From positions 62,001 through 126,000 of IMG/VR virus record IMGVR_UViG_3300042564_002819: a DNA stretch of 64,000 nt. One strand, written 5' to 3'. Shown piece after piece: positions 5,051-34,484 of this stretch. The notes under the pieces were generated by a model that saw only the letters and a program-made list of their open reading frames with translations, did no database searches and was not told the DNA's origin. The position numbers were made by a program, and so were the translations under genes. How positions within the stretch are numbered: position 1 is the first letter of the stretch; each line of letters opens with the position of its first letter.

Positions 5051-6130
5051 TTATTTAAACTGTTCTGCAAAAGGATCAAACTCGATACCACATTTCATAG
5101 CACAAACTTTTAATTTTCCATTTTCGTAACTGTTTTCATGCCACGACGCTTCTATAAGATCAAAAATTTCTGTAGAAAATACACGTTCTAAACCATGTAT
5201 CTTAGCATTTATTGCATCTTTGCCGCCGGCAAAATTAATAAATTGCCATATTTGTTCTTGTTTAGGATCTTTTTGCCACCATTTGTACATTCGACCAGCA
5301 GTCCAACAACAAGGCATTGCTATCCCTTCTGCTGTAATAAACAAACTGCCTTCGTCTTTTACCTTGCATCTGATAGGAGTTTGTTGATAGTAAGCATCCA
5401 TGCTTCCGTATTTTATTTCTAACAATGTTTGCTTCTTTAATGCATTGTTTACATATTTGTCATCGGGCTTTTTAAGTTCGGTTGTTTGATTACCTTTTCG
5501 ATCAATTGCTTGGTGTGATTCTTTTTTCTTGCTATCTTGCGTAATAAATCTACCAGTTTTTTTAGCAACAAACTTTTCAAAGCCTAATTCCTTTGACAAC
5601 GCTTCTGCGTCTTCGACCTGATGTTGGTTATGTTCAAATATTAAAAAATCCCAACGTGCTCTGCCGCCGGCTGCAATAAATGCTCGCATACTACGTTCGA
5701 CTATATTCCAGTTAACACCTTGACGATACAAATGATTTGTATCACCGAGTCCGTCTACACTAAAAATAACAGTACCTGCTCTTCCAAGTATAGTTGCAAG
5801 TTCTTGCCACCATTCGGGATCACGGGCGCCAGCATTTGTATTCATGCTTAACCACATCTTAGGATTATTTTGTCTAAAATAGCGAAATATTTCTAGTGTG
5901 TCTCGAGCAACAATTGGATCTCCTAAATTACCGCACATATACATGGTGTTTAGCTGTGCTATAAATTCCGGTGTGAATATTTTTTTACAATCATCGAGTG
6001 TTAGTTCACTTAAATCTATATGAGGATTTAGTGCTCCGCCGTTTTGATTACGGTCACACATAGGGCAACTAGCTTGACAGTTTTGTGTTACTTCTAAGTG
6101 TATGGTTTTTATATCTTTATATTCATACAT
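5051..6130 (-). CDS. Radical SAM protein with C-terminal Twitch-like domain
   Basis: CQASCPMC, GNLGD, FSVDG; C...PCCW...CAMKC; paralog of 1931..2980. Confidence 0.88.
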   Translation of the reverse strand: MYEYKDIKTIHLEVTQNCQASCPMCDRNQNGGALNPHIDLSELTLDDCKKIFTPEFIAQLNTMYMCGNLGDPIVARDTLEIFRYFRQNNPKMWLSMNTNAGARDPEWWQELATILGRAGTVIFSVDGLGDTNHLYRQGVNWNIVERSMRAFIAAGGRARWDFLIFEHNQHQVEDAEALSKELGFEKFVAKKTGRFITQDSKKKESHQAIDRKGNQTTELKKPDDKYVNNALKKQTLLEIKYGSMDAYYQQTPIRCKVKDEGSLFITAEGIAMPCCWTAGRMYKWWQKDPKQEQIWQFINFAGGKDAINAKIHGLERVFSTEIFDLIEASWHENSYENGKLKVCAMKCGIEFDPFAEQFK

Positions 6131-10432: not shown

Positions 10433-10435
10433 AAA

Positions 10436-12008: not shown

Positions 12009-12850
12009 GCGTTAGGGTATTTTTCTTTAATAAAATTTGCTAGTTCTTCTGCTATTACTTTATATCCATCAACATTAGGATGAATACAATTGGTTAAATG
12101 TTTCTTTGGATAATCTAAATTGCTGTAATGGTTATAGTATTGCGGCTGCATTTCATCTGAAAGCCAGTTATCTTTTCTAACTAATAATTCTACAAATGTC
12201 TTATAATCTCTAAAATTGTGTATATAACATGACCAATCTACTTTATTTGCTAATTTGTCGCAATGCTCATATAAAAAGTCTTTGCCACGGTCATCAAATG
12301 CGTTTGCTAAAACAAATTTTAAATTGTTGGCTTTACAAAAAGTTTGCACTTCTAAAATATTACATAAAGTTTCGATTGCAGTTGCATCCTCGGCATAAAC
12401 TTGTCTTGTGTATATATCCCATAATTTACTGTTGCCTAGGTGCGGCCACACTGTTTGAAAATTATAATGACCTGCATCTTTAGTATCACTTTTATAACAA
12501 ATTTTAGTATTTTTCCAAGAATCTCTAAAAAAATCAAATCGTTCATACCCACTCATCATGAACACTACAATTCCGTTTTCAACTTTTGAAAAATCTATAT
12601 TTGTAAGATACAGACTTCTTGCACTGCCTCTATTTCCTATGCCGCGTTGTCCGAGATTGTAAGGAATGTATTCTGACAAATAATCTCTACATAATACATT
12701 AACCCAACTATTTCTGTGTTCGTGTTCTATAAGATGATAACTTTTGTGCATTGGAAGATTAATTTTTCCATTGTATTCTTTCCAGATCTCTTCTGGATAA
12801 CCGCCTTCGCCTTGTGTCCAACTACATCCTAAGCCAAATAAAACATTCAT
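12005..12850 (-). CDS. SGNH/GDSL-hydrolase-like protein (possible O-acyl transferase/esterase)
   Basis: Block I-like GCSWTQG, NLGQRGIGN, and C-terminal IHPN..GYK.IA. Confidence 0.6.
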   Translation of the reverse strand: MNVLFGLGCSWTQGEGGYPEEIWKEYNGKINLPMHKSYHLIEHEHRNSWVNVLCRDYLSEYIPYNLGQRGIGNRGSARSLYLTNIDFSKVENGIVVFMMSGYERFDFFRDSWKNTKICYKSDTKDAGHYNFQTVWPHLGNSKLWDIYTRQVYAEDATAIETLCNILEVQTFCKANNLKFVLANAFDDRGKDFLYEHCDKLANKVDWSCYIHNFRDYKTFVELLVRKDNWLSDEMQPQYYNHYSNLDYPKKHLTNCIHPNVDGYKVIAEELANFIKEKYPNA

Positions 12851-13890
12851 TATCTAAAATCCTCGTATTTGTCATCACGTACAGTATCTAATGTAACACA
12901 GTGTGGGCCACCGCTTAATGTTCTTGCATGTCGCATTTGTACTGGCATTACATCAAAACCACGTGACTCTAATTGTTTGATTAAAGGAATTTGATTTTTT
13001 TCAACTGCAACTAAATTTTCGCTAATACTTAGCACATTCATACTTAACCAAGGACTTGCAGGAGCCCAGTGATCTATAAATGGTGTAGGAATTGGATCTT
13101 CTGCCCAAATTTTATCCCAAGATTTAAAATAGGCAGGAATGTTATTATTGTTAACTCTGCTCGGATTTAACAATACCTTTCCTGGAGCCAAAGGTAATAT
13201 TGTTGTATCGACATGAACATAAGCATATATGTTATCCATAATATGTACATTATATTTTTCACCCAATGTTGATTGTAACCATTGAGATCCTAATTTATTA
13301 CCAGAATTTGAAACAAGATAAAAAATGTCTCGACCGCATTTAATAACGTTGGCTGCGTCGAACGCAATTTCGTATTCGGTTAAAGTAGGTTTAGACAAAT
13401 CTGATCTGTCATAAAGGTCATCTAACAGTTCAGGTTTTGGAGCAGATATCCATCTGCTACCTTTAGAAAAGTATTCCTTAAAAAGTTTTCTATAACCTAA
13501 GGTTTCAAAGTATCTAGATCTTAACGGCATCGGAGTTTCTATTAGCATATCTCCAATTACTAAAACACTATCTCTAGGACAATACATGTAGTATCCATCA
13601 GACGTCCAGTCCGGTGTTGCACATAGCAACCCTAAGTTTTTTATTTCAGGACGATGAACTGTAACATTAACAGATTCTAATTGTTTTTGAAATGCATCTA
13701 AATCTTCTACAGTTTCGTCTATAACTTGTTCAGGGTATTTTCCTGCTGGCAATCCGGAAACTGTATCGTAATTTGCATAGTCAACACAATGAATGTCATG
13801 TTTTTTTGTTTTAGGTATTTGTGCATTTTCTGCCCGACCTAATATTACTTCTTTTAGAGTTCCCCATTCTGTGTTCGAGTTAACTTTCAT
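12850..13890 (-). CDS. Amidinotransferase (glycine / inosamine-phosphate amidinotransferase family)
   Basis: VNSNTEWGTLKEVILG, YCPRD, and catalytic-type FDAAN (Asp), HVDTT (His), GGPHC (Cys). Confidence 0.9.
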   Translation of the reverse strand: MKVNSNTEWGTLKEVILGRAENAQIPKTKKHDIHCVDYANYDTVSGLPAGKYPEQVIDETVEDLDAFQKQLESVNVTVHRPEIKNLGLLCATPDWTSDGYYMYCPRDSVLVIGDMLIETPMPLRSRYFETLGYRKLFKEYFSKGSRWISAPKPELLDDLYDRSDLSKPTLTEYEIAFDAANVIKCGRDIFYLVSNSGNKLGSQWLQSTLGEKYNVHIMDNIYAYVHVDTTILPLAPGKVLLNPSRVNNNNIPAYFKSWDKIWAEDPIPTPFIDHWAPASPWLSMNVLSISENLVAVEKNQIPLIKQLESRGFDVMPVQMRHARTLSGGPHCVTLDTVRDDKYEDFR

Positions 13891-14536
13891 ATATTCTGTA
13901 AGGCCAAAAGACCTTTTGCTCCTTTAAATCTTTATAGGTTAAGTTACTGCCGGTATCTGGATTTTCATCAGGTAGATTTTCTAAAAGTAATAATCCCGAA
14001 GCTGCTTCTTCCGGAGTCATGTACATGTGATAACCAATACATTCATAATCGTCCTCGTCGTGCTTAACGTATTTGTGACGACCATCGTAAATCATTGGTC
14101 TGCACCAATTTATAAAATCATAATCGTCGGTTAAAATGACACCACCTTTTCCTATTTTAAGAGTTTTTCTATGATGGAAACTAACACAGTAATAAGAACC
14201 TTTTACATACATGCCTCTTTTAAACCTAGTAGCACCATCTATAATAGGGGTAGGTTCTAAGTAATATTCTCCACTCCATTCTTTTTCAACAAATTTAATC
14301 CTATTTCCTGCATGTATTATTTGCATAGGTGTACTTGCGTAAGTATGCGAAGGTATGCTAATTATTTGATTTTTTATGCCTAAGTATTTCATACAAAGAA
14401 ACATAGCATTTGAACAACTGTCAACACAAACAGCGTATTTTGATCCTGCATATTCTGCTAATTTGTTTTCAAAAAGTGTTACTGCATCCCAAGGATCGTT
14501 AATTTCATATCCTTTATTTTTCAGTTGGGATATCAT
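13880..14536 (-). CDS. Short DegT/DnrJ/EryC1/StrS-family PLP aminotransferase
   Basis: FENKLAEYAGSKYAVCVDSCSNA, IIDGA, SFHHRKTLKIGKGG. Likely start ATG 14536 after GGGGA (ORF track starts at 14608). Confidence 0.8.
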   Translation of the reverse strand: MISQLKNKGYEINDPWDAVTLFENKLAEYAGSKYAVCVDSCSNAMFLCMKYLGIKNQIISIPSHTYASTPMQIIHAGNRIKFVEKEWSGEYYLEPTPIIDGATRFKRGMYVKGSYYCVSFHHRKTLKIGKGGVILTDDYDFINWCRPMIYDGRHKYVKHDEDDYECIGYHMYMTPEEAASGLLLLENLPDENPDTGSNLTYKDLKEQKVFWPYRIYES

Positions 14537-15254
14537 AAGGTTCCCCTGTTTCTTCGTCAAACCAATAAAGGCTTCTATGAGGCAAGTCTTTTGAATCGTA
14601 TGCTGCATTGCTTACATAAAAGAAAAGTCTAAATGCATTTCTTGTTATTCCTTCAGGGCATGTTAACGGATCTGGAAATCCATGAAATCCTTTTTTATGG
14701 TGTCTCCATAATACTGCTCTGTTGAATAGCGGAGGTACTCTTTGTATTATATTTTTATTTTGAAAATCATTAAACTGTAAGTGGCCGCCCCACTCATCTT
14801 TCCAGTCACTATTTAAATATATAATAAACGAAAGCATACGATGAACTTTCATTGTATCGTTCCAATTAAAGTCAGTATGTATTTTTAACGACGACCCGGT
14901 TTTAATTTTGCTATATCCGGCTCCAACTAAGTAAGGGTCCGGAATTAAATCTTTAATCCCAGTTATTTCTGTAAGCCATTTCATAAATTGTTGACTATGA
15001 AACTGATTTACAAAATTTTCTGCTACAGGTGCAACATCCATGTTTATACATTCTTTCATGCTGCTACCGCGTCTAGTAAATTCTGTCCAATAATAATCTG
15101 GAATATTATTGCATTCTTTTTCTAAATCGTAGGCTAACTCTAGTGGAAGAAAGTCGTCAAGCACAATCATAGGAAATGGAGGAGTGCCTACAAATGTGTC
15201 ATTTAATTTTTTAGTATTGTTAAATTTTGTTCTAACGTGATCGATTAATTTCAT
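14514..15254 (-). CDS. 2OG-Fe(II) oxygenase
   Basis: PFPMIVLDDFL, HTD (HxD), YLN..W..EWGG.L, distal HGF and Arg. Confidence 0.85.
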   Translation of the reverse strand: MKLIDHVRTKFNNTKKLNDTFVGTPPFPMIVLDDFLPLELAYDLEKECNNIPDYYWTEFTRRGSSMKECINMDVAPVAENFVNQFHSQQFMKWLTEITGIKDLIPDPYLVGAGYSKIKTGSSLKIHTDFNWNDTMKVHRMLSFIIYLNSDWKDEWGGHLQFNDFQNKNIIQRVPPLFNRAVLWRHHKKGFHGFPDPLTCPEGITRNAFRLFFYVSNAAYDSKDLPHRSLYWFDEETGEPYDIPTEK

Positions 15255-15267: not shown

Positions 15268-16506
15268 TTAATATGCGTTGTTAAACCAATGGTCAGGTGG
15301 ATTATTTAATAATAAATTATCAAAATCTTTATTAAATTTTTTGTATGTTATACCCGACTTTATATTAGCTAGTCTATTCATAACAACATTATAATTATGA
15401 GTTGTTTCAGGAATAGTTTTGTAAATAATTTTTTTAAATTCGTTGTCGGACATTCTGTTAAGATGATCTACTTGGTTATGAATATGATAAATTCTTTCCC
15501 ACGCTGTATTTAGTGTATCGTATGATTCATCAAAAACATTAGAAAATGTCTTAAACCCATGTTGACGTGTACGAGATAAATGATTTTCTGTTGCATATAC
15601 AAAAAATGGATGTCTATACATCATAGATTTATAAGTTTTTTCTGTACATTGAAAATGAGATGAGATGTCATAGTTGTTTGTTTCTACTAATAAACTCATA
15701 GCAGAATTTATAAATGCATCTTGAAGTGTATTAGAAATAAATTGTTGCCCTGGCGGTATTTCTTTAGACTCATTTTCTAAGAGACACGGCATAGATCTTA
15801 CAATTTCTGTTTTTTCGTCGTTCCAGTATTCGTTTAATTCATTTCCCCAGATAGGATTTTTTGCAGATATATCAGCTATGCTATTTTTAAAAATAGTATC
15901 AATTTCTTCTAAAGAATAGTATTGGCGAGGTTCTATTCTATTATCAGCATATATATTTTTAACATTAAAAAATGAATAATAAGAATTGTTTAATATTCCT
16001 CGGCGTCGTAAATCAACAAATGATACAAGTCTTGTGTTATGCCAATTTCTACTTAAAAATAGAAAACGTTTTTTAAATTTTTTAGTTAAAAATTCATGTA
16101 ATACAATTAGTAAAGGTCCCGGTACTATAGCAAAATTTATGTTTGTTTTTATTATACTTTTTATTAAATCTACATCATGCTCAGAATGAGCCATTACTAG
16201 TATCTTTTCTTCAGAAATTTGATTTATTTCTATCCATTTTTTTAATTTTTCAATAGTGTAAATTGACGTGCCATCAGAGAAATTTACTAAAAATAATGCA
16301 TTTAATTTTTTAAATCTTTCGTCATTAAACAACGAATCATTGGCTACTTTATGTTCTTCTAAATAAACAACCTTTTTTAAAGAACTCGAATCTTTAACAA
16401 ATTTTTTAAAATCGTATATTATTTCTACTTTTTCCATGTCAAAGTGTCGCTGAAACGGAGGAGTTGCCTCCGAAGCTAACACTGTATAGAATAAGTATTC
16501 TTTCAT
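15268..16506 (-). CDS. Hypothetical protein of the EKT-motif family (putative GT10-like glycosyltransferase)
   Basis: VET...CTEKTYK...HPFF...GFKTF...DESYD shared with three other genes in the cluster. Confidence 0.55.
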   Translation of the reverse strand: MKEYLFYTVLASEATPPFQRHFDMEKVEIIYDFKKFVKDSSSLKKVVYLEEHKVANDSLFNDERFKKLNALFLVNFSDGTSIYTIEKLKKWIEINQISEEKILVMAHSEHDVDLIKSIIKTNINFAIVPGPLLIVLHEFLTKKFKKRFLFLSRNWHNTRLVSFVDLRRRGILNNSYYSFFNVKNIYADNRIEPRQYYSLEEIDTIFKNSIADISAKNPIWGNELNEYWNDEKTEIVRSMPCLLENESKEIPPGQQFISNTLQDAFINSAMSLLVETNNYDISSHFQCTEKTYKSMMYRHPFFVYATENHLSRTRQHGFKTFSNVFDESYDTLNTAWERIYHIHNQVDHLNRMSDNEFKKIIYKTIPETTHNYNVVMNRLANIKSGITYKKFNKDFDNLLLNNPPDHWFNNAY

Positions 16507-17678
16507 TTTCTTGTATTTCCATAATGTATTGTATAATAATTATTGCACGGTGCAATATGTCTCCATGGATCTATCACTGTGCAACCTTCGGGCCACAATA
16601 TGTTTTCAACCCATTCTTCCCAATACCCGATTAAATAAACATCTGCGATAGGAAAAATAGTATCTCCTGTGTTTGGATCATAATACTGCACTGTACCACC
16701 GTGCTTTTCAATATAATGTCCTGTTAACATACTCGACGAGCCTATAGTATAAGAAACTCCCGGTTTATAAGCTTTGCCTACAATGCATACATTGTTTCCA
16801 ACAGTTAAACAACGTTTAGCTATATTTTCTGCTTGAATCTCTCTTGCTGTCATAATAGAATCAAAAAGATCATAACCTAAATCAAGTTTTTCAGCAAGAT
16901 ATCTAAGAGCAATGTTGTCTCTAGGATGACAAGCACCTCCGTCGCCCATTCCTGCTTTCATATATCCAGGGCCCATAATCCTGCGTGTTGACTTTGTTAA
17001 TGCATCTGTGACTATATCTACATTGATGTTACCGTTGCGTTCAGCAACATCCTGTATCATATTAACTAACCCTAATTTTGCAGAAATAAAAGTATTATAA
17101 AAAATCTTAATACTTTCTGCTTCATCCCATGTTCCTACTTCATATCTAGGATTATTTTCCATTATAGGTTTATAAAATTCAATTAATTCTTGTGCGTCAG
17201 TTGTTAGACTGCCATCTTTGGTACCGATAATAACCATTTCAGGATTTATCATATCCCATTTTACAGTACCCATTGCTATTAAATACGGATTATATATAAA
17301 TCTTGCATTGTTTATTAAATCTATAAAATGCGTTCTAACAGTTCCTGGTAAAACTGTGCTTATTAACACTACTAGTTGAGATTTGTTAACATATCTATTA
17401 ACTTCTGTTAATACTTCTTTAACTATAGTATAGTCAAAGTCTTTATTAGGTAAATGACTAGTCGGAGTTTCGCCGCCGTATTCAGATTCATGCGGGGTAG
17501 GAACAGCAATAAAAATTATATCACGATCTGCAACTGCTTCTTTAATAGTCGATGCCATATTGAAATTTTTAGGAGATCTTGTTTCAATGTCATATCCTAT
17601 TACATTGTAAAATTCGGCTATTACTTCGGCACAATCTTGTCCGAGCTTGCCACATCCTATCATTGCTACGTTCTTCAT
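16503..17678 (-). CDS. UDP-glucose/GDP-mannose dehydrogenase family protein (atypical)
   Basis: GCGKLG, AVPTP, STVLPGT, KIFYNTF, GGACHPRD (catalytic Cys), GKAYKP. Confidence 0.88.
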   Translation of the reverse strand: MKNVAMIGCGKLGQDCAEVIAEFYNVIGYDIETRSPKNFNMASTIKEAVADRDIIFIAVPTPHESEYGGETPTSHLPNKDFDYTIVKEVLTEVNRYVNKSQLVVLISTVLPGTVRTHFIDLINNARFIYNPYLIAMGTVKWDMINPEMVIIGTKDGSLTTDAQELIEFYKPIMENNPRYEVGTWDEAESIKIFYNTFISAKLGLVNMIQDVAERNGNINVDIVTDALTKSTRRIMGPGYMKAGMGDGGACHPRDNIALRYLAEKLDLGYDLFDSIMTAREIQAENIAKRCLTVGNNVCIVGKAYKPGVSYTIGSSSMLTGHYIEKHGGTVQYYDPNTGDTIFPIADVYLIGYWEEWVENILWPEGCTVIDPWRHIAPCNNYYTIHYGNTRK

Positions 17679-19738
17679 TTTTGTTCCTCGTTTATGTTAG
17701 TGTTTAAAATACAAAAATACTTGTTTAATCTTCCGTGATCAGTAAGTGGTGCCGGTTGAATTTTTTTGAGACAGTTTTTTATTTCACTAGGTATAAAACT
17801 TCTATCGTTAATTATTTTTAGAAAATTTCGATAATTAAATTCTATTTTTGGTTTTAACAAATCATATACTTCTCTGAAGTTAGTTATTTTACTAACTGTT
17901 TCTATATTTTTTACATATAAATGAGCACGCTCATCTATATCAGCTACATCATCGAAGGTATAATCTATTATTTCGTCGTACAAAACAAATCCTAACTTTT
18001 GTAAATACTTATTAAAATGCATCGACGAAAGTGTTACAAACGGTTTTTCTAAAATAATAGGCGTTATAGTTTTTTCACTAATCATTATTGTTTCATGTGA
18101 GCATTCTGTAACAAAATCAAATAAACTTTCGTGGTACTGATGCGGAAGTAAAAACGAGTCAAGTTTTGTATCAAAATCGTCATCAATTTTTTTAACAGTA
18201 TTATCAAAATATTTAAATTCAAAATTAGAATTTTCTTTTAAAAAGTTATGCCAAGTTACAATTCCTTTATCAAATAAATTATATTTCGAAATGTAATCTA
18301 TTGTATAGCATCGATGTAAGTGCCCACGATTATTAAAACACACAAACGGATACAAAAAATTCTTATTGTTTTTTAATTCTTTTATATTACGAGGTTTTAA
18401 TACTGATAAAGTATAATTAAACCAATATGTAGGATAATGTTTTAATTTAAAATTTTTAATGCCAAAACTATTTACTAGATCTGTAAGATATTTGGATTCA
18501 GGTGCACCTGTAATCCAAATAACACTAACATTATAGGAATTTACTACGTCAACAAATTCTTTAGTAACCCAAGGGTGCCATTCGTTTTCTCCATAGATCG
18601 TAACTAATTCAGGTTTTGTATTTTTAATACTTTGAATTAAATTGTCATAGTTAAAGTTATGCCACAAGTCTGCTTCGAGCTCGTAAACTTTGTGTTTATA
18701 GTGATCTATATTAATATTATAAATTTTAAACTTAGAAAAAAACTCTAAAAGTTCTCTGTTATATTCGCTTACTTGAGTTTGTTTTTTAAGATTAATATTA
18801 ACAAATGTTTTTACAATCTTAGGAACATAGTTGTCTGATTTTGTTATATCCAATGCTAGACTTTTATTGTAATCAATTTTCTCTTTTATTTTATTATATA
18901 AGTCATTCAAGTTATTTTTTTGATCAATAACGTTAGTTACATTTACCATTAACTTTTGTATGCGTTTTTCAACATCGGGTTCTGAATCGAACGAATAATC
19001 AAAAATTTCGTCATATAGTTTAAATCCTAGATCTTCAAGATTTTTATGATAGTACTGAGACCCAAGAGTTAATGTAGGTAATCCACATAAGATAGGATTA
19101 GCAGTTTTTTCAGACAAAAGAAATGTATCAGTAGTAGTTTCTGTTGGAATATGCAAAAAAGATTCCAAAAAAGTTTTATTAAAATGATAACTAGAAAAAT
19201 GATTTTCAAACCCGTCTCCGGATAGTAATATCTCCCCTGTATAATATTTCCAATTTTCTTTTAACTCGTTATTAGGAATTTGCTGGTACGATACTATGCC
19301 TTTATCAAGATAGTTATTTTTTGCTAATTCATCTATCCATTGTGTTCTATGAAGTCGAGTACGACCATTAAACGTTAAAAAAGGATTTACAAAATTAAAT
19401 TTGTAATTTTCAATATTATTAAAAAGATCATTATTTTTTTCAAGTTCTTTAGCAGTTTTTAAAAACCAAAACGTCGGCCATGTAATAACTTTTTTTATTA
19501 AATCCTTATTAATTCCGGTCTTAAGTACATTAGAAAAAAGCCATTTTTTGTCTTTTACACAAACTACAACAGTTATTGTAATTAAATTTTCATTGATATA
19601 ATCAACTATTTTTTTTGTTAGATTTAATTCATATTCGTGCATATAAAAAAAATTTATATGTTTTAAATTTTTTATTTTTATATAGTTGTATAATTCGTCA
19701 TCGACAAATTCCCATGCATAAATTGTATTATCGATCAT
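17675..19738 (-). CDS. Two-domain EKT-motif protein (putative glycosyltransferase, internal duplication)
   Basis: Both halves contain PF..FN.R..LHR, DKGIV, SEKT..PI and LGF.LYDEI.DY.FD. Confidence 0.55.
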   Translation of the reverse strand: MIDNTIYAWEFVDDELYNYIKIKNLKHINFFYMHEYELNLTKKIVDYINENLITITVVVCVKDKKWLFSNVLKTGINKDLIKKVITWPTFWFLKTAKELEKNNDLFNNIENYKFNFVNPFLTFNGRTRLHRTQWIDELAKNNYLDKGIVSYQQIPNNELKENWKYYTGEILLSGDGFENHFSSYHFNKTFLESFLHIPTETTTDTFLLSEKTANPILCGLPTLTLGSQYYHKNLEDLGFKLYDEIFDYSFDSEPDVEKRIQKLMVNVTNVIDQKNNLNDLYNKIKEKIDYNKSLALDITKSDNYVPKIVKTFVNINLKKQTQVSEYNRELLEFFSKFKIYNINIDHYKHKVYELEADLWHNFNYDNLIQSIKNTKPELVTIYGENEWHPWVTKEFVDVVNSYNVSVIWITGAPESKYLTDLVNSFGIKNFKLKHYPTYWFNYTLSVLKPRNIKELKNNKNFLYPFVCFNNRGHLHRCYTIDYISKYNLFDKGIVTWHNFLKENSNFEFKYFDNTVKKIDDDFDTKLDSFLLPHQYHESLFDFVTECSHETIMISEKTITPIILEKPFVTLSSMHFNKYLQKLGFVLYDEIIDYTFDDVADIDERAHLYVKNIETVSKITNFREVYDLLKPKIEFNYRNFLKIINDRSFIPSEIKNCLKKIQPAPLTDHGRLNKYFCILNTNINEEQK

Positions 19739-21653
19739 TTACTTTTGTTATCCACGATTTTCCAAAATTTCGCCGTCTAGCAAAAAATATTTGTTCACAA
19801 AACTTTTGTAGACTAATATCTTTATCCTCAGGAAAATCAAATTTGTATCTTACTTTATTTTTTAAAATTTCGTTAGATTGTATGTATCCTATAAAGTCAA
19901 AGTCAAAATTTAAAATCTTTGGATAGTGTGTTGTTTGAGAATAGTCAATAATATAATTTCTTTGCAATTGTATTAATTGATCCGAGAGTTCTTTATCTAA
20001 GTCGAAATTTTCTTTTAAAAATTTATCTATTAAATCAAATACATGTTGACTTTTATTTTCGCTATGAATATTAATTATGGTACTGTGAATCAAATTCCAA
20101 CCATGTATTTCAATTCCTTGAATAGGAACATGATTTATTAAACCGTAATCTGACCAATTTTTATAATGTTTTCTAATTCTATTAATTTCAGAATTAAGCC
20201 AAGGATCTTGTTTTATATAATCAAAAAGCTTTTCATAAAAATCTTCGTACAAAACATTTGAATGCTTATAAAGAAATCTGCTAATATAATTAGTTATACC
20301 GTTGATGTGAAAGGTATTCATAAACCAACTAAAAACTTGAGCATCTAGCATTGTTTCTATTGGTAAATCTTTAGTAGAAATTACAACTTCTACTCCTTCT
20401 TTTAATTCATTTTCATTATATGTTCCAACAAGATAATCGTAAACAATTCTACCTTTTAAATTGTACTCTTCTCTTTGTACCAGATTCATTTCAGCATTTT
20501 CAAGAAGCTGTGCTTGATAGATTGTTATTCCTGTGTGATTTCCTGCTCTATATAGTTTATAAAAGTTGTCTTTCCAAGATTTTAGTGTTTCGCCAGGTAG
20601 GCCTAGAATTAATTCTGTGTACAGAGGAATGTTGCTTTCTTCGCAAAGTTCAAAAACTTCTTCAATTTTGTTTGTATCGAGATTTTTTCTTTTTATGATT
20701 TCAAGAACATTTTCATCCATAGTTTGTACACTTAGATTTAACCCTATCTTAGCACCGCCATCATAGATTAATTTTTTAACAATATCAACTATTTCTTTTT
20801 TTTGATTTTTTGCCCAGCTTATTGTATAAGCTTTTGGATTATTATAGGTTTTTTGAACTTCTATTAATTTGTCGGCTATTAACGAATCTCTGTCTGGAAA
20901 TATTCCAAAATTGGCATCGGTTATACTAACAAAATCGCATCGATTTTCGCCGATCCATTCGAGCTCCTTGTAAACCCTTTCAAGGTCAAACTTTTTAACT
21001 TTGTTGTATGTTAAACTACCCCAGTCACAGAATGTACAAGCATACGGACAGCCTCTATTAGTTTCTAAAGTTGCGTTCCATGTTATCTCAGGATACTTTT
21101 TCATTAAGTTGTCAAATATCCCAATTAAATAAGGACTAGGAATTTCGTCTAATTCATTTATTCTTAAACTCGGCCCTGTGTCAATTGTTTTATTATCAAC
21201 ATTAACTAAGAGTCCTGGTATTTTTAATATTTCTTCTTTGCTGCTAGCTTCTAACAACTTCTTAAAAGATATTTCGCCTTCTTGTTTAAAACAAACGTCA
21301 ATATAAGGATAAATTTCAAAAAAATTAGGATTTTCAATTGACGGTTCAGGCCCGCCGAACAATATCATTATATCAGGATTTATTTTTTTTAGTTCTCTTG
21401 CTAAAACATTATTATAGCTTTTATTCCATATATAAGTGCTAAATCCTACTATAGAAGAATCTTTTAACTGTTCAACTGCTTCTTCTATAGGGTCTCTTCT
21501 CCAAATAAAGTCACCCAAGTAATAATTATTTTTTATACTTTCAAATTGTTGTGCATATGCCCATACAACCGCAGGACTGTATGGAAGATAATATGCATTA
21601 AATTCCTTAGGACCTTGCTGAAAGTTCGGGCTTACAAAACTTACTTTTTTCAT
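19728..21653 (-). CDS. Cobalamin-binding radical SAM protein (class B methyltransferase-like)
   Basis: N-terminal B12-binding-type VGFSTYIWN...LFGGPEP...EGE; ETNRGCPYACTFCDWG; DANFG; ILGLPGET. Confidence 0.88.
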   Translation of the reverse strand: MKKVSFVSPNFQQGPKEFNAYYLPYSPAVVWAYAQQFESIKNNYYLGDFIWRRDPIEEAVEQLKDSSIVGFSTYIWNKSYNNVLARELKKINPDIMILFGGPEPSIENPNFFEIYPYIDVCFKQEGEISFKKLLEASSKEEILKIPGLLVNVDNKTIDTGPSLRINELDEIPSPYLIGIFDNLMKKYPEITWNATLETNRGCPYACTFCDWGSLTYNKVKKFDLERVYKELEWIGENRCDFVSITDANFGIFPDRDSLIADKLIEVQKTYNNPKAYTISWAKNQKKEIVDIVKKLIYDGGAKIGLNLSVQTMDENVLEIIKRKNLDTNKIEEVFELCEESNIPLYTELILGLPGETLKSWKDNFYKLYRAGNHTGITIYQAQLLENAEMNLVQREEYNLKGRIVYDYLVGTYNENELKEGVEVVISTKDLPIETMLDAQVFSWFMNTFHINGITNYISRFLYKHSNVLYEDFYEKLFDYIKQDPWLNSEINRIRKHYKNWSDYGLINHVPIQGIEIHGWNLIHSTIINIHSENKSQHVFDLIDKFLKENFDLDKELSDQLIQLQRNYIIDYSQTTHYPKILNFDFDFIGYIQSNEILKNKVRYKFDFPEDKDISLQKFCEQIFFARRRNFGKSWITKVNDR

Positions 21654-22912
21654 CGTTGTTTATATTTTCCTGAAAATATTTCTTCTACAGTATTAAACAA
21701 TCTTTTGTGAGATTCATATACATAATCATGTTGCATATAATTTAGTTGATTTTGTTTTACCATTTTTAATGATTCTCTAATAAAAGACTCTTTGTGTTTT
21801 CTACTTGTATTTACCCACTTGGTCAACGACTCATGTGCTGCATAAAATCTATCAACTGGACTTTGAATATCATCATACGATTGATCTAACCCAGGAAAGT
21901 CTGTTTGATAGCCCATACTTCTTAATTCTTTTAAAATATTGTATTGTCCTAGAATTATAAACGGATGACCGGCAACAATCGGTTTAAATGTTTTTTCAGT
22001 AATAAACATTCCCGGTTGTTGAAATGCTGTTTCTGTTACAAAACTTAATAAACTATTTTTATAAATAGAATGATTAAAAATTGTTTCGTTGTTAAAGTCT
22101 GGATTTTCTACTGTAAAATCTTTGTCAACAATTAACGGTAAGTTTTTTGTTAACGTATTTTTATATTGATCATCATCTATATTTAACACTGTACTCGGAG
22201 GTACTTGAGTACTATTAGGATCATTACGATAATTACCGCTTACTAATCCATGTTGTGCAAGATTTTTTGTAATCAAATAATACAAATGATCAATTCTATG
22301 ATTTCTAGCTGTTCTATTTAAACTATTAAAGTCTTTTGAGTCCGATGACTTTAAAGCATCAAGTATCAATGGTTGCTTTGGAATGCGATCTTGAAAATAG
22401 AAAAATCCTGTTAAAAAGTATACATGTGCAACACTTTGTTTCTGTCTATTATTAATACACCATTGCTCGTATTGACTTGAGAACCATGAATTATTGTCTA
22501 CTAATATCACGCTGTATCTAGGAAGATGTAAATTTTTTATTGCCTCATGAAGTTCAAAAAATCCATCAACTAATCCGTTAATTGTTTCTCTAATTAAAGG
22601 AAACCCTTCTGACTGATTGTCAATGACTATAAGAACTTTTCCTTTTCTAGCTGCCTGAATAACGTCTAAAGGTATTTCATATAATACATGTCTAGGAGGA
22701 CCGTAGCGTTCTTTTCCAGACCAAGTTTCAGCATAACATCTTACACTAACAAGATATATACCCGGATTATCGTATTCATTTGTTTCTGCAATTTCAAAAC
22801 CTGCTTGCTTAAAAGAATGAAATGCGTTAGTATTGTCAAACGTAAGAGGGTGCGGTCCATCTGATAATTCATGCAAGTTGCTATGATTTAGGTCGTCGAC
22901 ATAGAATCTCAT
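21650..22912 (-). CDS. EKT-motif protein (putative GT10-like glycosyltransferase)
   Basis: FNSLNRTARNHR, VTET...FITEKTFKPI...HPFIILG...DQSYD. Confidence 0.55.
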   Translation of the reverse strand: MRFYVDDLNHSNLHELSDGPHPLTFDNTNAFHSFKQAGFEIAETNEYDNPGIYLVSVRCYAETWSGKERYGPPRHVLYEIPLDVIQAARKGKVLIVIDNQSEGFPLIRETINGLVDGFFELHEAIKNLHLPRYSVILVDNNSWFSSQYEQWCINNRQKQSVAHVYFLTGFFYFQDRIPKQPLILDALKSSDSKDFNSLNRTARNHRIDHLYYLITKNLAQHGLVSGNYRNDPNSTQVPPSTVLNIDDDQYKNTLTKNLPLIVDKDFTVENPDFNNETIFNHSIYKNSLLSFVTETAFQQPGMFITEKTFKPIVAGHPFIILGQYNILKELRSMGYQTDFPGLDQSYDDIQSPVDRFYAAHESLTKWVNTSRKHKESFIRESLKMVKQNQLNYMQHDYVYESHKRLFNTVEEIFSGKYKQR

Positions 22913-23874
22913 TATTTACTTTTTTCTATTTGTTCAAGTATCCACTTGTAAGTTTTTAACAATCCGTTTTCTAAATTATCCGGAGGAGACCAATTTAGTT
23001 GTTCTTTGATTAACTGATTATGACTTGTTCTTCCTGCTACTCCTATAGGACCGTCAACGTTTTTTATTTGTATATTTTTGTTTGTTAGTCTTCCTACTAG
23101 CATTGCTAACTCGTTAATGGAAATCATTCTTTCGCTACCTAAGTTTAAAGGAAGACTGTAATCTCCGTCTACAATTTTTTTAATTCCAACAATACATTCA
23201 TCTATATACAAATAACTACGAGTTTGTGTTCCTGGGCCCCATACTTCGATCTCTCCTGTTTCTGTTTCAGCAACTTTTCTACATATTGCAGCAGGAGACT
23301 TTTCTTTGCCACCAGTCCAAGAACTTTCTGGACCAAAGACATTATGAAATCTTGCTATTCGAACACGTATTCCATAGTTTTTAGCAAATGACAAAAACAA
23401 ACGCTCACTAAACAACTTTTCCCAGCCGTATTCGGAATCAGGATTTGCAGGATATGCACTGTCTTCACTTAAAAGAGGATTGGACGGATCTGCTTGATTA
23501 TGTTCAGGATACATGCAGGCACTGCTAGAATAAAAAATTCTGTTAACTCCCTTTTCTACCATTTCTCTAAGTATATTAAGATTAATTATAGAACTATTAT
23601 ACATAATATTTGCATCGTTGTCGCCTGTAAATATGTATCCAGCACCACCCATATCGGCTGCAAGTTGATAAATTTCATATAAATCGCTTGTAACTATCTT
23701 ACTTACATGTTCTTGATTTCTTAAATCAGCTATATGAAATTCGTCGGCAGTTGTTTGAGAAAATTCAGGATATCTTAAATCTACTCCTATTACATAAAAA
23801 CCTTGACTTTTTAAATCATTGACTAAGTGTACACCGATAAACCCGCCTGCACCGCAGACTAAAACTTTTTTCAT
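22912..23874 (-). CDS. NAD-dependent epimerase, GDP-mannose 3,5-epimerase-like
   Basis: GAGGFIG, LAADMGGAGYI, SSACMYP, YGWEK, RFHNVFGP, GGKEKSPAAICRK and QTRS closely follow the GME signature. Confidence 0.88.
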   Translation of the reverse strand: MKKVLVCGAGGFIGVHLVNDLKSQGFYVIGVDLRYPEFSQTTADEFHIADLRNQEHVSKIVTSDLYEIYQLAADMGGAGYIFTGDNDANIMYNSSIINLNILREMVEKGVNRIFYSSSACMYPEHNQADPSNPLLSEDSAYPANPDSEYGWEKLFSERLFLSFAKNYGIRVRIARFHNVFGPESSWTGGKEKSPAAICRKVAETETGEIEVWGPGTQTRSYLYIDECIVGIKKIVDGDYSLPLNLGSERMISINELAMLVGRLTNKNIQIKNVDGPIGVAGRTSHNQLIKEQLNWSPPDNLENGLLKTYKWILEQIEKSK

Positions 23875-25169
23875 ATATTTGCACCGTACTTTTCTACAAA
23901 GTTATTTAATTCAATAGGTTTTAAATTTGCAAGATTTTTGAAATTATATTCTCTTATTTCTTTCGTTCTTGCATAAAATGTGTGTAATTCCATAGGACTC
24001 CATTTTGAAATAGTTCTACAGAGCGAAATTATCTTTTTCATTCTTTTTTTAGGGTCTGATTCATTATCGTAGCCTTCATCCCAGAAATCCGAAAACGTTT
24101 GAAATCCTAATTTTCTTAAAGATTCTAAAGTTTTTGCTGGACCAACAATAATAAAAGGTTGTTTAAAAATTATAGGTTTAATAGTTTTTTCAGTCATATG
24201 TATGATGTTATTCTCAAAGTTAGTTTCAGAAACTATACTTATATAAGTTTTATCATACCAACTTATTGTGTCCTCAAGTCGATCTTCCATAGGAAATCTT
24301 GAAAAGTCGTGAGTATCTAAAACATAGGGCAACGAATCGTACACTTGGTATAACTCGTCAATCTTTAATCTTATATCGTATTCTGCTACTGCCCGTTGTG
24401 CGTCGTGAATCCAATGTTCCACTGGAACATCTCTTGAAAAACTCATATGTGTACGTTTTAGCAAATCATGCTCAAAAAACTTTAATAATAAAATGTATCT
24501 ATGCAATCTGTGACGTCTATTGAAATTTAGAAATAATTTTTCTTTTTTAACATTTGCATCTGTTCTCTTTGAGAATACAGGATCTTTGCATACCACACGT
24601 TGCTGCAAGACATATAATCCTGCATATTCACAGTTTATTCTTTCTTCGATACAATATTTATTGCAATATTTTTCATAAATTTCTTGTGAATTTGCACAAT
24701 TATTTAAGTATATTACTTTATTCAAAGGTATTTGATTTTCTTTAAAATAATCATGTATACTTTTAAAAGTTGCATTATCAACAAAGCTTTCATATTTGTT
24801 AGAAAGTAAAATAAAACCATTCCTATTTCTTACAGCATCTAAAACAGTTTGGCTTACAGGAGTTGTTTGAAAAACACCCAAGTGACTGTTTAATGTAATT
24901 TCTGTAAAAAACTTTCTAGGAGAAAGTAATATTTCATACATAAATGGAGTGTCTCCAAGACTTTCAACGTCGTACGAAGGAACAAATCTACATTTAACAT
25001 AATCTTTTATTAACATCGAAATCGGATCTTGCTCATCTGTTACAGAATTGCTGTCCCATCTTAAATACGGCAATCGTTTTATTAAATCATACAGGTCCGG
25101 TACCTTGTAGTTATTCAACGGACCTTCTGGTCCTATCCAGTCATATACAAAAACCAGTTCTTTATTCAT
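23871..25169 (-). CDS. EKT-motif protein (putative GT10-like glycosyltransferase)
   Basis: FLNFNRRHRLHR, VSET...MTEKTIKPI..KQPFII.G...GFQTF..FWDEGYD. Probable start ATG 25169 after AGGA (ORF track 25187). Confidence 0.55.
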   Translation of the reverse strand: MNKELVFVYDWIGPEGPLNNYKVPDLYDLIKRLPYLRWDSNSVTDEQDPISMLIKDYVKCRFVPSYDVESLGDTPFMYEILLSPRKFFTEITLNSHLGVFQTTPVSQTVLDAVRNRNGFILLSNKYESFVDNATFKSIHDYFKENQIPLNKVIYLNNCANSQEIYEKYCNKYCIEERINCEYAGLYVLQQRVVCKDPVFSKRTDANVKKEKLFLNFNRRHRLHRYILLLKFFEHDLLKRTHMSFSRDVPVEHWIHDAQRAVAEYDIRLKIDELYQVYDSLPYVLDTHDFSRFPMEDRLEDTISWYDKTYISIVSETNFENNIIHMTEKTIKPIIFKQPFIIVGPAKTLESLRKLGFQTFSDFWDEGYDNESDPKKRMKKIISLCRTISKWSPMELHTFYARTKEIREYNFKNLANLKPIELNNFVEKYGANI

Positions 25170-26004
25170 AGTCATTCCTACAGTCAAGTGCTTTTTTAAA
25201 ATTTAATAATTTTTGATTTGTTGAAAGTCTTTTTTCTAACATAATTAAATTAATCTGTGTTTGAAAGTCAAAATTTGTCATTACTTCGTCGACATATTCT
25301 TCCATTTTTACAATATTTAAATCTAATATTTTTAAAGATACTATTTCTTTAATATACATTAGTGTGTAATTTGTTAATGGGTGATCGTCGTGATAGTGTT
25401 GCATTTTTTTATCATTGTCTACATAGTAACAATTTTTTATTGGCATTTTTTTACTACGAAAAAAAACCGTCATTGTTTTACTATCAATAAAATGATTTTT
25501 ATATAATGAGAGCTTTTTAATTAACGAATTATAAAAATAAGAAAGAGTTGTATCTATAAACAATTTTGAAATTTCGTTAGAATAAACCATACTATCAGGA
25601 GACATAAACATAAAATACCATTTACAACCTGTATTTTCTAATAAATTTATTAAATTAACCATATACGTTAGTGTTTTTATTATTGAAGTTTTATCTGAAA
25701 TTAAAAAATCTAATTTAGCTTTTGTTAACTGTTCAGATGTTAAACTTCCTAAACACACCCAATCTCCATTTTCATTGATGTAATCAGTTCTGTTTGGTTC
25801 TGTCCACTGTATTATTACCGTATCAGTATTTTTTACTTTATTACTGAGTAATACGTTGGTTGCTTTGTGAAATATATAAAAATTTCCACATCCTGGATTT
25901 CCATAATTTTTTGTCACATTGTAACTTTGTGCCACAATGTCTGGCCACATCGGCCACGAATATTGAGCAAAACTGCATCCAAACGTATATAGGTTACCCT
26001 GCAT
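25162..26004 (-). CDS. SGNH-like protein
   Basis: FGCSFAQ, NYGNPGCGN, IQWT..NR.D, late DDHP; same motif layout as 12005..12850. Confidence 0.55.
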   Translation of the reverse strand: MQGNLYTFGCSFAQYSWPMWPDIVAQSYNVTKNYGNPGCGNFYIFHKATNVLLSNKVKNTDTVIIQWTEPNRTDYINENGDWVCLGSLTSEQLTKAKLDFLISDKTSIIKTLTYMVNLINLLENTGCKWYFMFMSPDSMVYSNEISKLFIDTTLSYFYNSLIKKLSLYKNHFIDSKTMTVFFRSKKMPIKNCYYVDNDKKMQHYHDDHPLTNYTLMYIKEIVSLKILDLNIVKMEEYVDEVMTNFDFQTQINLIMLEKRLSTNQKLLNFKKALDCRNDYE

Positions 26005-32963: not shown

Positions 32964-32971
32964 TATTTATA
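32964..32971 (-). promoter_or_regulatory. T4-like late promoter TATAAATA
   Basis: Exact T4 late consensus overlapping the upstream stop codon, about 25 nt before ATG 32938. Confidence 0.7.
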
Positions 32972-34457: not shown

Positions 34458-34484
34458 TATGGAAGAACCCCTAGTGCTTTATGT

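What the first reader, a model, noticed from the sequence alone, without database searches (positions are those of the whole stretch)
16503..17678. NDP-sugar dehydrogenase lacking the thioester-hydrolysing glutamate (NPEFLxEG replaced by NPYLIAMG)
Seen: the NAD-binding motif, Lys/Asn and catalytic Cys (GGACHPRD) are kept, but the family motif NPEFLxEG reads NPYLIAMG (about 17268-17292). Known: that first Glu (Glu161 in human UGDH) activates water to hydrolyse the thioester, and its loss stalls the enzyme at the covalent intermediate. Inference: altered chemistry, such as release of the 6-aldehyde for transamination by a neighbouring PLP enzyme, or aminolysis/acyl transfer giving a uronamide instead of a uronic acid.
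Basis: partly seen in the sequence, partly recalled or inferred. Interest (0 to 1): 0.62.

Follow-up and report, generated by a model that had tools for sequence, protein, structure and literature searches.

The report
Viral sugar dehydrogenase missing its hydrolytic glutamate
A giant marine phage carries a well-conserved sugar-nucleotide dehydrogenase from a large, mostly viral branch of the family. The whole branch has replaced the "invariant" glutamate, and its partner residues, that normally finish the reaction, so its last chemical step is an open and testable question.

Summary
Window 16503-17678 (minus strand) encodes a 391-aa UDP-glucose/GDP-mannose-dehydrogenase-family protein. It reads NPYLIAMG where canonical enzymes read NPEFLxEG, and it keeps the catalytic Cys, Lys, Asn, Asp and Thr.

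This is not a one-off mutation. 118 of 121 close homologues share the motif, and 0 of 144 cluster representatives down to 35% identity have Glu at that position. The same clade has also lost Tyr14, Glu165, Lys129, Asn287 and Arg327 (human and S. pyogenes numbering). It has gained near-invariant Lys11, Tyr194, His251, Asp246 and Arg279.

The clade is mainly viral. Its members sit among, and are sometimes fused to, an unannotated GT-B glycosyltransferase family. In this phage the neighbours also include:
- a strong GDP-mannose 3,5-epimerase homologue;
- a B12 radical-SAM enzyme;
- a short DegT aminotransferase;
- a StrB1-like amidinotransferase.

Best reading (about 0.45): an active NDP-hexose (probably GDP-hexose) 6-dehydrogenase with a rebuilt hydrolysis and NAD pocket that still makes a uronic acid. 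Stopping at the aldehyde, or non-hydrolytic acyl transfer, cannot be excluded. No model coordinates were available, so active-site compensation could not be measured.

The parts
16503..17678 (-). NDP-sugar 6-dehydrogenase-family gene (391 aa, P0001), member of the Glu-less, mostly viral clade
   Evidence: Pfam N-terminal and central domains are above cut-off; the C-terminal domain is weak. TIGR03026 scores 149 bits, below its 189.8 cut-off. The AF2 model has pLDDT 96.8, and the Foldseek top hit is human UGDH 2q3e with TM 0.81.
17268..17291 (-). NPYLIAMG in place of NPEFLxEG (Tyr132 at the human Glu161 position, Met136 at Glu165)
16917..16940 (-). GGACHPRD: catalytic Cys250 and Asp254, plus the clade-specific His251 and Arg253
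17094..17108 (-). KIFYN: Lys191 and Asn195 (human Lys220/Asn224), with clade-specific Tyr194 where canonical enzymes have Ala or Ser
17640..17657 (-). GCGKLG dinucleotide-binding loop; Lys11 replaces the 98%-conserved Tyr10/14
15268..16506 (-). GT-B glycosyltransferase paralogue (412 aa), translationally coupled to the dehydrogenase (4-nt overlap)
   Evidence: Paralogy shown. The fold of paralogue g438 is GT-B. The family is fused to the dehydrogenase in other phages.
17675..19738 (-). GT-B family protein with two copies of the domain (687 aa), immediately upstream, ATGA overlap
19728..21653 (-). B12-binding radical-SAM enzyme (KedN5-like C-methyltransferase family, below cut-off)
21650..22912 (-). 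GT-B paralogue (420 aa)
22912..23874 (-). GDP-mannose 3',5'-epimerase homologue (320 aa)
   Evidence: phmmer against PDB 2c59: E 3e-91, 309 bits, full length
23871..25187 (-). GT-B paralogue (438 aa), the one that was modelled
   Evidence: AF2 pLDDT 85. Foldseek returns only GT-B enzymes. VIA: T4 beta-glucosyltransferase Z 12, alpha-1,3-fucosyltransferase Z 11.
14514..15254 (-). 2OG-Fe(II) oxygenase
13880..14608 (-). Short DegT/DnrJ/EryC1-type aminotransferase (242 aa, N-terminal part of the fold only)
12850..13890 (-). Amidinotransferase, close homologue of streptomycin StrB1
   Evidence: phmmer against PDB 1bwd: E 2.6e-101, 342 bits, residues 4-343

Best explanation
The gene encodes an intact, selected and probably active NDP-hexose 6-dehydrogenase. 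It belongs to a distinct, largely viral clade with the signature GxGKLG / YNPx[FL]IAMG / KxxYNTF / GDGGxCHPRD.

Shown: it has the UGDH fold and keeps the covalent-catalysis core (Cys250 nucleophile, Lys191, Asn195, Asp254, Thr108) and 16 of the 18 family-invariant residues. The clade has replaced the network that, in canonical enzymes, gates NAD(H) exchange and activates the hydrolytic water: Tyr14->Lys11, Lys129->Ile106, Glu161->Tyr132, Glu165->Met136, Arg327(Sp)->Ile312 and Asn287(Sp)->Arg279.

Inferred: it still oxidises the C6 alcohol through a thiohemiacetal and a thioester to an NDP-uronic acid. Deacylation would be helped by clade-specific residues that appeared together with the loss. 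Tyr194, one residue before Asn195 on the catalytic helix, is the most constant candidate; His251, next to the Cys, is the second. Asp246 and Arg279 are more likely a structural salt bridge.

Inferred from context: in this phage the substrate is probably a GDP-linked hexose of the GDP-mannose/GDP-L-galactose branch, and the product is used by the flanking GT-B glycosyltransferases to build a heavily decorated glycan in the phage's tail-fibre region.
For: - Fold and core residues.
- Strong conservation: 95-sequence alignment with Cys250, Lys191, Asn195, Thr108 and Asp254 invariant; counts in 150 representatives.
- Single origin: the Glu-less clade lies on one side of a branch with SH-aLRT 99.
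- Stepwise remodelling: the neighbouring cyanophage S-SSM7/P-TIM68 type has already lost Tyr14, Glu165 and Arg327 but keeps Glu161 and lacks Tyr194/His251. The Glu loss therefore coincides with the gain of Tyr194/His251.
- Donor-sugar role: fusions of the dehydrogenase to GT-B (both orders), GT2 and methyltransferase domains, and GT-B genes on both sides here.
- GDP-sugar context: GDP-mannose 3,5-epimerase homologue at E 1e-91 in the window and directly downstream in 373-kb relatives, followed there by a cytidylyltransferase-like/mannose-6-P-isomerase-type cupin protein. A PF01050 ORF is present in the 330-kb genome that carries an identical gene.
- Acid product: in Bdellovibrio the adjacent SDR best matches 6zl6/MoeE5, which I recall to be NDP-uronate 4-epimerases (weak).
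- NadE-like genes lie next to the gene in Bellamy, HTVC008M, S-SSM7 and P-TIM68.
Against: - Both residues proposed in the literature for thioester hydrolysis (Glu161: PMC3265891; Tyr10: PMC4794789) are gone. They are invariant or 98% conserved across three substrate specificities, so a mere substrate change does not explain their loss.
- His251 is Leu or Val in 8 of 145 representatives.
- No coordinates were available, so I could not show that Tyr194 or His251 reaches the thioester.
- The NadE-like neighbours pass the true NAD synthase model (175 bits against a 63.65 cut-off), so they may have nothing to do with a uronate.
- Bacterial genomes with a Glu-less member usually also hold canonical paralogues, sometimes 8 kb away, which suggests a non-redundant function.
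- A DegT plus amidinotransferase pair lies close by.
- The C-terminal nucleotide-binding domain is too divergent to name the nucleotide.
Confidence: 0.45

Rival explanations
1. Two-electron enzyme. It oxidises the C6 alcohol only to the aldehyde (held or released from the thiohemiacetal). The short DegT aminotransferase converts this to a 6-amino sugar, and the StrB1-like amidinotransferase converts that to a 6-guanidino sugar.
For: - The residues lost are exactly those used for the NADH/NAD+ swap between the two oxidations and for hydrolysis.
- Dehydrogenase, DegT and amidinotransferase lie together in at least 13 of 80 viral loci. They are sometimes directly adjacent (L024, L074), and some loci have no other dehydrogenase within 8 kb.
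- The order oxidation, transamination, amidination is the logic of streptidine synthesis (own knowledge; StrB1 match).
- Bdellovibrio has UGDH-like, SDR and DegT as one run of genes.
Against: - Cys250 is kept in 143/145 representatives. An aldehyde-releasing enzyme has no obvious need for it, and a thiohemiacetal would be oxidised further.
- Bellamy and HTVC008M share the active-site signature but have no DegT in their complete genomes.
- Most of the 80 loci have no DegT within 8 kb.
- DegT and amidinotransferase are more constantly paired with a radical-SAM gene and lie far from the UGDH in S-SCSM2R. SPASM radical-SAM dehydrogenases could supply the carbonyl (own knowledge: BtrN).
- DegT-type enzymes normally act on ring ketones.
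Confidence: 0.15
2. Four-electron oxidation to the thioester, followed by non-hydrolytic discharge. The acyl group passes to ammonia, an amine or phosphate, giving a uronamide or an activated uronate. This would parallel CoA-acylating aldehyde dehydrogenases and GAPDH, which lack the hydrolytic base.
For: Loss of both hydrolysis residues with retention of Cys. A Cys-His pair (CH) is near-invariant. The pocket around the nicotinamide has become hydrophobic (Ile106, Tyr/Phe132, Met136).
Against: No amine-binding feature or partner was identified. NadE-like ATP-dependent amidating enzymes next to orthologues would be redundant if the amide were made directly. By my recollection, interception of the thioester by amines was looked for and not found in the C. 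jejuni enzyme (PDB 7kws appears); I could not retrieve that paper (one search found nothing).
Confidence: 0.12
3. The clade acts on a different class of substrate or has a different catalytic cycle. Examples are a redox-neutral reaction on tightly bound NAD+ (such as C5 epimerisation via the 6-aldehyde) or a non-sugar primary alcohol.
For: Arg327 (NAD pyrophosphate clamp) and the in/out switch residues are all gone. The C-terminal domain is below the Pfam cut-off. A distant Rhizobium member sits between a dCMP-deaminase-like gene, a methyltransferase and a phosphoribosyltransferase.
Against: Lys305 (diphosphate contact), Arg233 and the VIDPWR end motif of the nucleotide-sugar site are kept. 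Fusions to glycosyltransferases argue for a donor-sugar product.
Confidence: 0.08
4. Catalytically dead pseudo-enzyme kept for a binding or scaffolding role.
For: It lacks a residue whose mutation cuts kcat about 600-fold in the human enzyme.
Against: All other catalytic residues are invariant over more than 8000 homologues and 35% identity. A dead enzyme would not conserve Cys, Lys, Asn, Asp and Thr.
Confidence: 0.03

Closest known systems
Human UDP-glucose 6-dehydrogenase (PDB 2q3e; E161Q mutant 3khu)
   Same: Same three-domain fold (TM 0.81). Same Cys/Lys/Asn/Asp/Thr core. Same eukaryote-type insertion after the TP loop. Best sequence match in the PDB (about 71-77 bits).
   Different: About 21% identity. 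Tyr14, Lys129, Glu161, Glu165 and Thr342 are all replaced. About 25 residues are missing after beta-2. The C-terminal domain is short and divergent. The natural protein resembles the E161Q trap mutant at the key position, but has co-evolved changes.
Cyanophage S-SSM7 gp259 / P-TIM68 gp180 'UDP-glucose dehydrogenase' (T4-like gene cluster 1382)
   Same: Nearest branch in the quick tree. Tyr14, Glu165 and Arg327 are already replaced, and the Cys motif is of the PRD type. It sits in a phage sugar cassette with a NadE-like gene and a glycosyltransferase.
   Different: It keeps Glu161 (YSPEF / YNPEF) and lacks Tyr194 and His251. Identity is 26-28%.
Synechococcus phage Bellamy gp227 and Pelagibacter phage HTVC008M AGE60496
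   Same: Same clade (63% and 53.5% identity) with the same NPYLIA[MQ]G / YNTF / CHPRD signature.
   Different: Different cassette: carbamoyltransferase, NadE-like, then (methyltransferase) dehydrogenase. There is no DegT in either genome, and no amidinotransferase or GDP-mannose epimerase homologue next to the gene. Both are annotated simply as UDP-glucose dehydrogenase.
CoA-acylating aldehyde dehydrogenases and GAPDH (works-like analogy only, own knowledge)
   Same: Thioester on a catalytic Cys after NAD+-dependent oxidation. The absence of the hydrolytic base goes with transfer of the acyl group to a nucleophile other than water.
   Different: Unrelated folds. No evidence here for an alternative acceptor.
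P. aeruginosa GDP-mannose 6-dehydrogenase AlgD (PDB 1mfz)
   Same: Family member acting on a GDP-hexose, the nucleotide suggested here by context.
   Different: It has the canonical NPEFLRE motif (own knowledge) and is a weaker match than UGDH (59.8 bits).

Membership tests
NDP-sugar dehydrogenase superfamily (UDPG_MGDP_dh; Freas et al. 2016) | Three-domain fold: N-terminal Rossmann domain, long central helix/dimerisation domain, C-terminal Rossmann-like domain | tested here: met
   AF2 pLDDT 96.8. Foldseek finds human UGDH at E 4e-26, TM 0.81-0.83.
NDP-sugar dehydrogenase superfamily | Pfam domains above gathering cut-off | tested here: inconclusive
   PF03721 scores 63.6 (cut-off 27) and PF00984 scores 61.1 (cut-off 25.4): both met. 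PF03720 (C-terminal domain) scores 19.1 against a cut-off of 30: not met.
NDP-sugar dehydrogenase superfamily | NCBIfam TIGR03026 subfamily cut-off | tested here: not met
   149.2 bits against a cut-off of 189.8
NDP-sugar dehydrogenase superfamily | Catalytic Cys nucleophile with Lys, Asn, Asp and Thr (human C276, K220, N224, D280, T131) | tested here: met
   C250, K191, N195, D254 and T108 are aligned to the PDB enzymes. They are invariant or nearly so in the clade.
NDP-sugar dehydrogenase superfamily | Invariant Pro-Glu (Sp Pro140-Glu141, human Glu161), the base for thioester hydrolysis | tested here: not met
   Pro131 is kept and Glu is replaced by Tyr132. 0/144 representatives have Glu. 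Invariance in the family is from PMC4794789.
NDP-sugar dehydrogenase superfamily | Tyr in the glycine loop (Sp Tyr10, 98% conserved) | tested here: not met
   GCGKLG; Lys in 126/138 representatives
NDP-sugar dehydrogenase superfamily | Remaining family-invariant residues (Gly x5, Thr83, Ser117, Glu201, Asn219, Asn287, Lys320) and Arg327 | tested here: inconclusive
   All are kept except Asn287->Arg279 and Arg327->Ile312. That makes 16 of 18 invariant residues kept.
NDP-sugar dehydrogenase superfamily | NAD+-dependent four-electron oxidation of the C6 alcohol to the acid | not testable with these tools
   Needs an enzyme assay.
UDP-glucose 6-dehydrogenase proper (EC 1.1.1.22) | Equivalog-level sequence models | tested here: not met
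   AglM 104.9 against 670; TuaD 100.5 against 700; PRK15057 45.7 against 757
UDP-glucose 6-dehydrogenase proper (EC 1.1.1.22) | UDP-glucose as substrate | not testable with these tools
   Context points instead to GDP-mannose-derived sugars. This is inference only.

The most novel reading that the evidence does not exclude
The whole clade has given up hydrolysis. The covalent C6 intermediate (aldehyde or thioester) is handed to a nitrogen nucleophile, so these phages would make 6-amino/6-guanidino sugars (with the DegT and StrB1-like enzymes) or uronamides directly. That would be the first non-hydrolytic member of the NDP-sugar dehydrogenase family and would point to a phage-built guanidinylated glycan.
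Probability: 0.25. Interest if true: 0.8.

Novelty: new variant of a known kind. Interest (0 to 1): 0.58.

Why it matters
The Pro-Glu pair and the loop tyrosine are treated as fixed features of every NDP-sugar 6-dehydrogenase and as the machinery that ends the reaction. Here a large natural clade does without them: 424 clusters at 50% identity score E<=1e-30, and more than 8000 proteins are close relatives. Its members are common in marine cyano-, pelagi- and jumbo phages and are also present in Bdellovibrio, Azospirillum, Rhizobium and Nitrosopumilaceae.

Either outcome is informative. The family may have a second, unrecognised way to hydrolyse the thioester, which would be useful for mechanism and engineering. 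Or these enzymes may make a different product. All of them are currently annotated as "UDP-glucose 6-dehydrogenase", which is probably wrong at least for the nucleotide.

The surrounding cluster holds GT-B expansions, a GDP-mannose epimerase homologue, radical-SAM enzymes, an aminotransferase and an amidinotransferase. This suggests that giant marine phages build unusual, possibly guanidinylated, glycans in their tail-fibre (host-recognition) region.

Tried and rejected
1. Measuring whether an acidic or basic side chain reaches Cys250 in the model was not possible. Structure prediction returns no coordinates and none are placed in /data.
2. Asp246 as the compensating acid was rejected as the first choice. 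It sits at the Tyr256(Sp) position, whose backbone is held by Asn287(Sp), and Asn287 is Arg279 here. A co-evolved salt bridge is the simpler reading. This is inference.
3. NadE-like neighbours as proof of a uronic acid were rejected as decisive. They pass the true NAD synthase model, occur in only 5 of 80 viral loci plus HTVC008M, and are absent from the 330-kb genome.
4. The window's own PP-loop gene (2977-3630) is not similar to those NadE-like genes.
5. Pfam, PHROGs and PDB sequence searches gave nothing for the 412/420/438/687-aa neighbours. Only the fold search identified them.
6. Literature searches for this clade, for amine interception of the thioester, and for the NadE-UGDH cassette found nothing specific.
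8. The careful ML tree did not finish in the time allowed. Only the quick tree (SH-aLRT) is reported.
9. ORF picking in the high-GC Azospirillum loci was unreliable, and those rows were left out of the tree.
10. No other genetic code was used.
Full report
**The observation**

The ORF at 16503-17678 lies on the minus strand and gives a 391-aa protein, P0001. It has a GAGGA box upstream, and its ATG overlaps the stop of the preceding gene. NPYLIAMG is encoded at 17268-17291 and GGACHPRD at 16917-16940.

Pfam finds the N-terminal and central domains of the UDP-glucose/GDP-mannose dehydrogenase family. The C-terminal domain matches only weakly. NCBIfam's general model TIGR03026 scores 149 bits, below its 189.8-bit cut-off, and every UDP-glucose dehydrogenase equivalog model fails by a wide margin.

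phmmer against PDB chains puts human and C. elegans UGDH on top, at about 71-77 bits. It aligns NPYLIAMGT with NPEFLAEGT, so human Glu161 is Tyr132 and Glu165 is Met136. Lys220, Asn224, Cys276, Asp280 and Thr131 are all matched.

The literature behind it also holds. E161Q lowers kcat from 0.85 to 0.0014 s-1 and accumulates a +562 Da thioester (PMC3265891).

Of 121 close homologues, 118 read NPYLIAMG. An exhaustive search of 1.84 billion cluster representatives gave 424 hits at E<=1e-30. The best 150 go down to about 35% identity and all lack the Glu. At that position the counts are Y66 F32 S18 A11 Q8 L4 H3, with no Glu among 144.

Freas et al. list 18 residues invariant in 229 family sequences covering three substrate types. 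Pro140-Glu141 (= human Glu161) is among them. They also list Tyr10 (98% conserved), described as catalysing the final thioester hydrolysis, and Arg327 (99%), which clamps the NAD pyrophosphate (PMC4794789). Egger et al. describe Tyr14, Glu161 and Glu165 as an in/out switch for the nicotinamide, stabilised by Lys129 and Thr342 (PMC3129169).

The phage protein keeps 16 of the 18 invariant residues. Its changes are these:

| Canonical residue | In P0001 | Frequency in representatives |
|---|---|---|
| Glu141 (Sp) / Glu161 (human) | Tyr132 | Glu 0/144 |
| Asn287 (Sp) | Arg279 | 136/144 |
| Tyr10/14 | Lys11 | 126/138 |
| Glu165 (human) | Met136 | 139/149 |
| Lys129 (human) | Ile106 | Ile 112/144 |
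| Arg327 (Sp) | Ile312 | variable (Asp 44, Thr 36, Ile 9 of 139) |

New near-invariant residues are Tyr194 (147/150, where canonical enzymes have Ala or Ser), His251 right after the Cys (136/145) and Asp246 (138/147).

Asp246 sits where the loop is normally held by Asn287, which is now Arg. I read that pair as a structural salt bridge rather than a catalytic acid; this is inference.

**Fold**

An AF2 model built from 95 clade members has pLDDT 96.8. It matches human UGDH with TM 0.81-0.83. Coordinates are not returned, so I could not measure active-site distances.

**Evolution**

In a quick ML tree the 40 Glu-less sequences lie on one side of a branch with SH-aLRT 99. Canonical UGDH and UDP-HexNAc dehydrogenases lie on the other side.

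The cyanophage S-SSM7/P-TIM68 enzymes branch next to the clade. They have already lost Tyr14, Glu165 and Arg327 but keep Glu161, and they lack Tyr194 and His251. The NAD-handling residues therefore appear to have changed first. The Glu loss coincides with the gain of Tyr194/His251. This is what a functional replacement would look like, and it is my main reason to prefer retained hydrolysis.

One caveat: eight representatives have Leu or Val in place of His251, so Tyr194 is the more constant candidate.

**Who has it**

The protein-atlas neighbours are almost all viral. The closest named phages are Synechococcus phage Bellamy (63% identity) and Pelagibacter phage HTVC008M (53.5%); both are annotated simply as UDP-glucose dehydrogenase.

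An identical gene lies on a 330-kb, 93%-complete IMG/VR contig. The window's own record is a 122-kb fragment.

The clade also occurs in at least 176 species genomes. Many are MAGs, but isolates of Bdellovibrio, Azospirillum, Methyloglobulus, Shinella and Rhizobium are included. Four of five genomes checked also carry canonical paralogues. In Bdellovibrio the canonical copy is only 8 kb away, which suggests a distinct job.

**Context in the window**

All genes run on the minus strand. Four neighbours without any Pfam, PHROG or PDB sequence match are paralogues of each other:
- 15268-16506;
- 17675-19738, which holds two copies of the domain;
- 21650-22912;
- 23871-25187.

A model of the last one (pLDDT 85) matches only GT-B glycosyltransferases. 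The top VIA matches are T4 beta-glucosyltransferase (Z 12) and alpha-1,3-fucosyltransferases (Z 10.4-11).

In 80 related viral loci this family is the commonest neighbour, with about 127 copies. It is fused to the dehydrogenase in seven cluster representatives, in both orders. Other representatives are fused to a GT2 domain or a methyltransferase. This argues that the product is a glycosyl donor.

The SDR at 22912-23874 is a full-length homologue of GDP-mannose 3',5'-epimerase (E 3e-91). In 373-kb relatives its orthologue lies directly downstream of the dehydrogenase. It is followed there by a protein combining a cytidylyltransferase-like domain with a mannose-6-P-isomerase-type cupin domain. 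The 330-kb genome has a PF01050 ORF. Orthologues of the epimerase accompany the gene only in the window's own sub-clade, in 9 of 80 loci. A GDP-hexose substrate is therefore a reasonable inference for this phage, but not for the whole clade.

**The amine branch**

Downstream lie a 2OG-Fe(II) oxygenase and a short DegT-type aminotransferase of 242 aa. After these comes a protein that Pfam missed but that is a close homologue of streptomycin StrB1 inosamine-phosphate amidinotransferase (E 2.6e-101).

The DegT and amidinotransferase genes lie near the dehydrogenase in at least 13 of 80 loci, usually with a B12 radical-SAM gene between or beside them. It also suggests a guanidino sugar or cyclitol.

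Four points count against that idea:
- The Cys is kept in 143/145 representatives.
- Bellamy and HTVC008M have the same active-site signature and no DegT anywhere in their genomes.
- The DegT, radical-SAM and amidinotransferase trio was reported, as annotation only, in cyanophage S-SCSM2R. There it is ORF305, 306 and 309, far from that phage's UGDH at ORF243 (PMC12801897).
- Radical-SAM dehydrogenases could supply the carbonyl (own knowledge).

**Evidence bearing on an acid product**

NadE-like genes sit next to the dehydrogenase in Bellamy, HTVC008M, S-SSM7 and P-TIM68. This would fit amidation of a uronate. However, these proteins pass the genuine NAD synthase model and are rare among the 80 loci, so I treat this as ambiguous.

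In Bdellovibrio the SDR coupled to the gene best matches 6zl6 and MoeE5 (E 2e-11). I recall both to be NDP-uronate 4-epimerases. This is weak support for an acid product.

**Verdict**

The finding is real. It describes a natural, abundant and so far undescribed variant of a well-known enzyme family.

I favour an active 6-dehydrogenase with a rebuilt hydrolysis and NAD pocket that still yields a uronic acid, probably GDP-linked here, for the neighbouring GT-B transferases (0.45). Stopping at the aldehyde for amination and amidination (0.15), non-hydrolytic acyl transfer (0.12), another cycle or substrate (0.08) and a dead enzyme (0.03) follow. None of these can be settled without an assay or a structure.

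Noticed in passing
window 12850-13890 (-), with 13880-14608 (-): Pfam missed a close homologue of streptomycin StrB1 inosamine-phosphate amidinotransferase (PDB 1bwd, E 2.6e-101). It sits directly after a short DegT aminotransferase. The pair, usually with a B12 radical-SAM gene, recurs in at least 13 of 80 related viral loci. This suggests that a guanidino sugar or cyclitol is made by marine phages. A 2025 paper lists the same trio in cyanophage S-SCSM2R as unexplained 'antibiotic synthesis genes'.
   Followed up: partly
window 15268-16506, 17675-19738, 21650-22912, 23871-25187 (all -): A paralogous family with no Pfam, PHROG or PDB sequence match folds as a GT-B glycosyltransferase. Fucosyltransferases and T4 beta-glucosyltransferase are among the best structural matches. 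There are about 127 copies in 80 related loci, several per phage, and the family is sometimes fused to the dehydrogenase.
   Followed up: partly
window 22912-23874 (-): Full-length homologue of plant-type GDP-mannose 3',5'-epimerase (309 bits). This implies GDP-L-galactose/GDP-L-gulose metabolism in a jumbo phage.
   Followed up: partly
window 549-1916, 3627-5042, 10436-11962, 25994-27370; 1931-2980 and 5051-6130; 2977-3630 (all -): Four SPASM radical-SAM paralogues, two further radical-SAM paralogues and a small PP-loop (QueC/NadE-like, weak) protein form repeated cassettes around the sugar genes. SPASM radical-SAM genes occur in 44 of 80 related loci.
   Followed up: no
window 13880-14608 versus 14514-15254: The DegT-like ORF is only 242 aa (218-222 aa in relatives). 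It covers only the N-terminal part of the aminotransferase fold and overlaps the 2OG-oxygenase ORF by 95 nt, so its true start may lie further downstream. I did not check whether such a short form can be an active PLP enzyme.
   Followed up: no
proteins P0212, P0216 and similar (about 780-800 aa relatives): Several bacterial and metagenomic members of the clade carry an intein with a LAGLIDADG endonuclease, inserted around the catalytic Cys motif.
   Followed up: no
window 38969-52780 (-) and 32967-38334, 57889-60387 (-): A 4603-aa ORF has CBM_5_12 and FG-GAP repeats. It lies next to three paralogous fibre-like proteins (one with a tail-collar domain, one with a Peptidase_G2 domain) and a DUF2345/M15-peptidase protein. 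The sugar cluster therefore sits beside the phage's tail and host-recognition genes.
   Followed up: no
L006 (Rhizobium leguminosarum CP030764.1) 8917-11688: A distant member of the clade lies in a run of methyltransferase, dCMP-deaminase-like gene and dehydrogenase, with a phosphoribosyltransferase on the other strand. This context looks like nucleotide rather than glycan chemistry.
   Followed up: no
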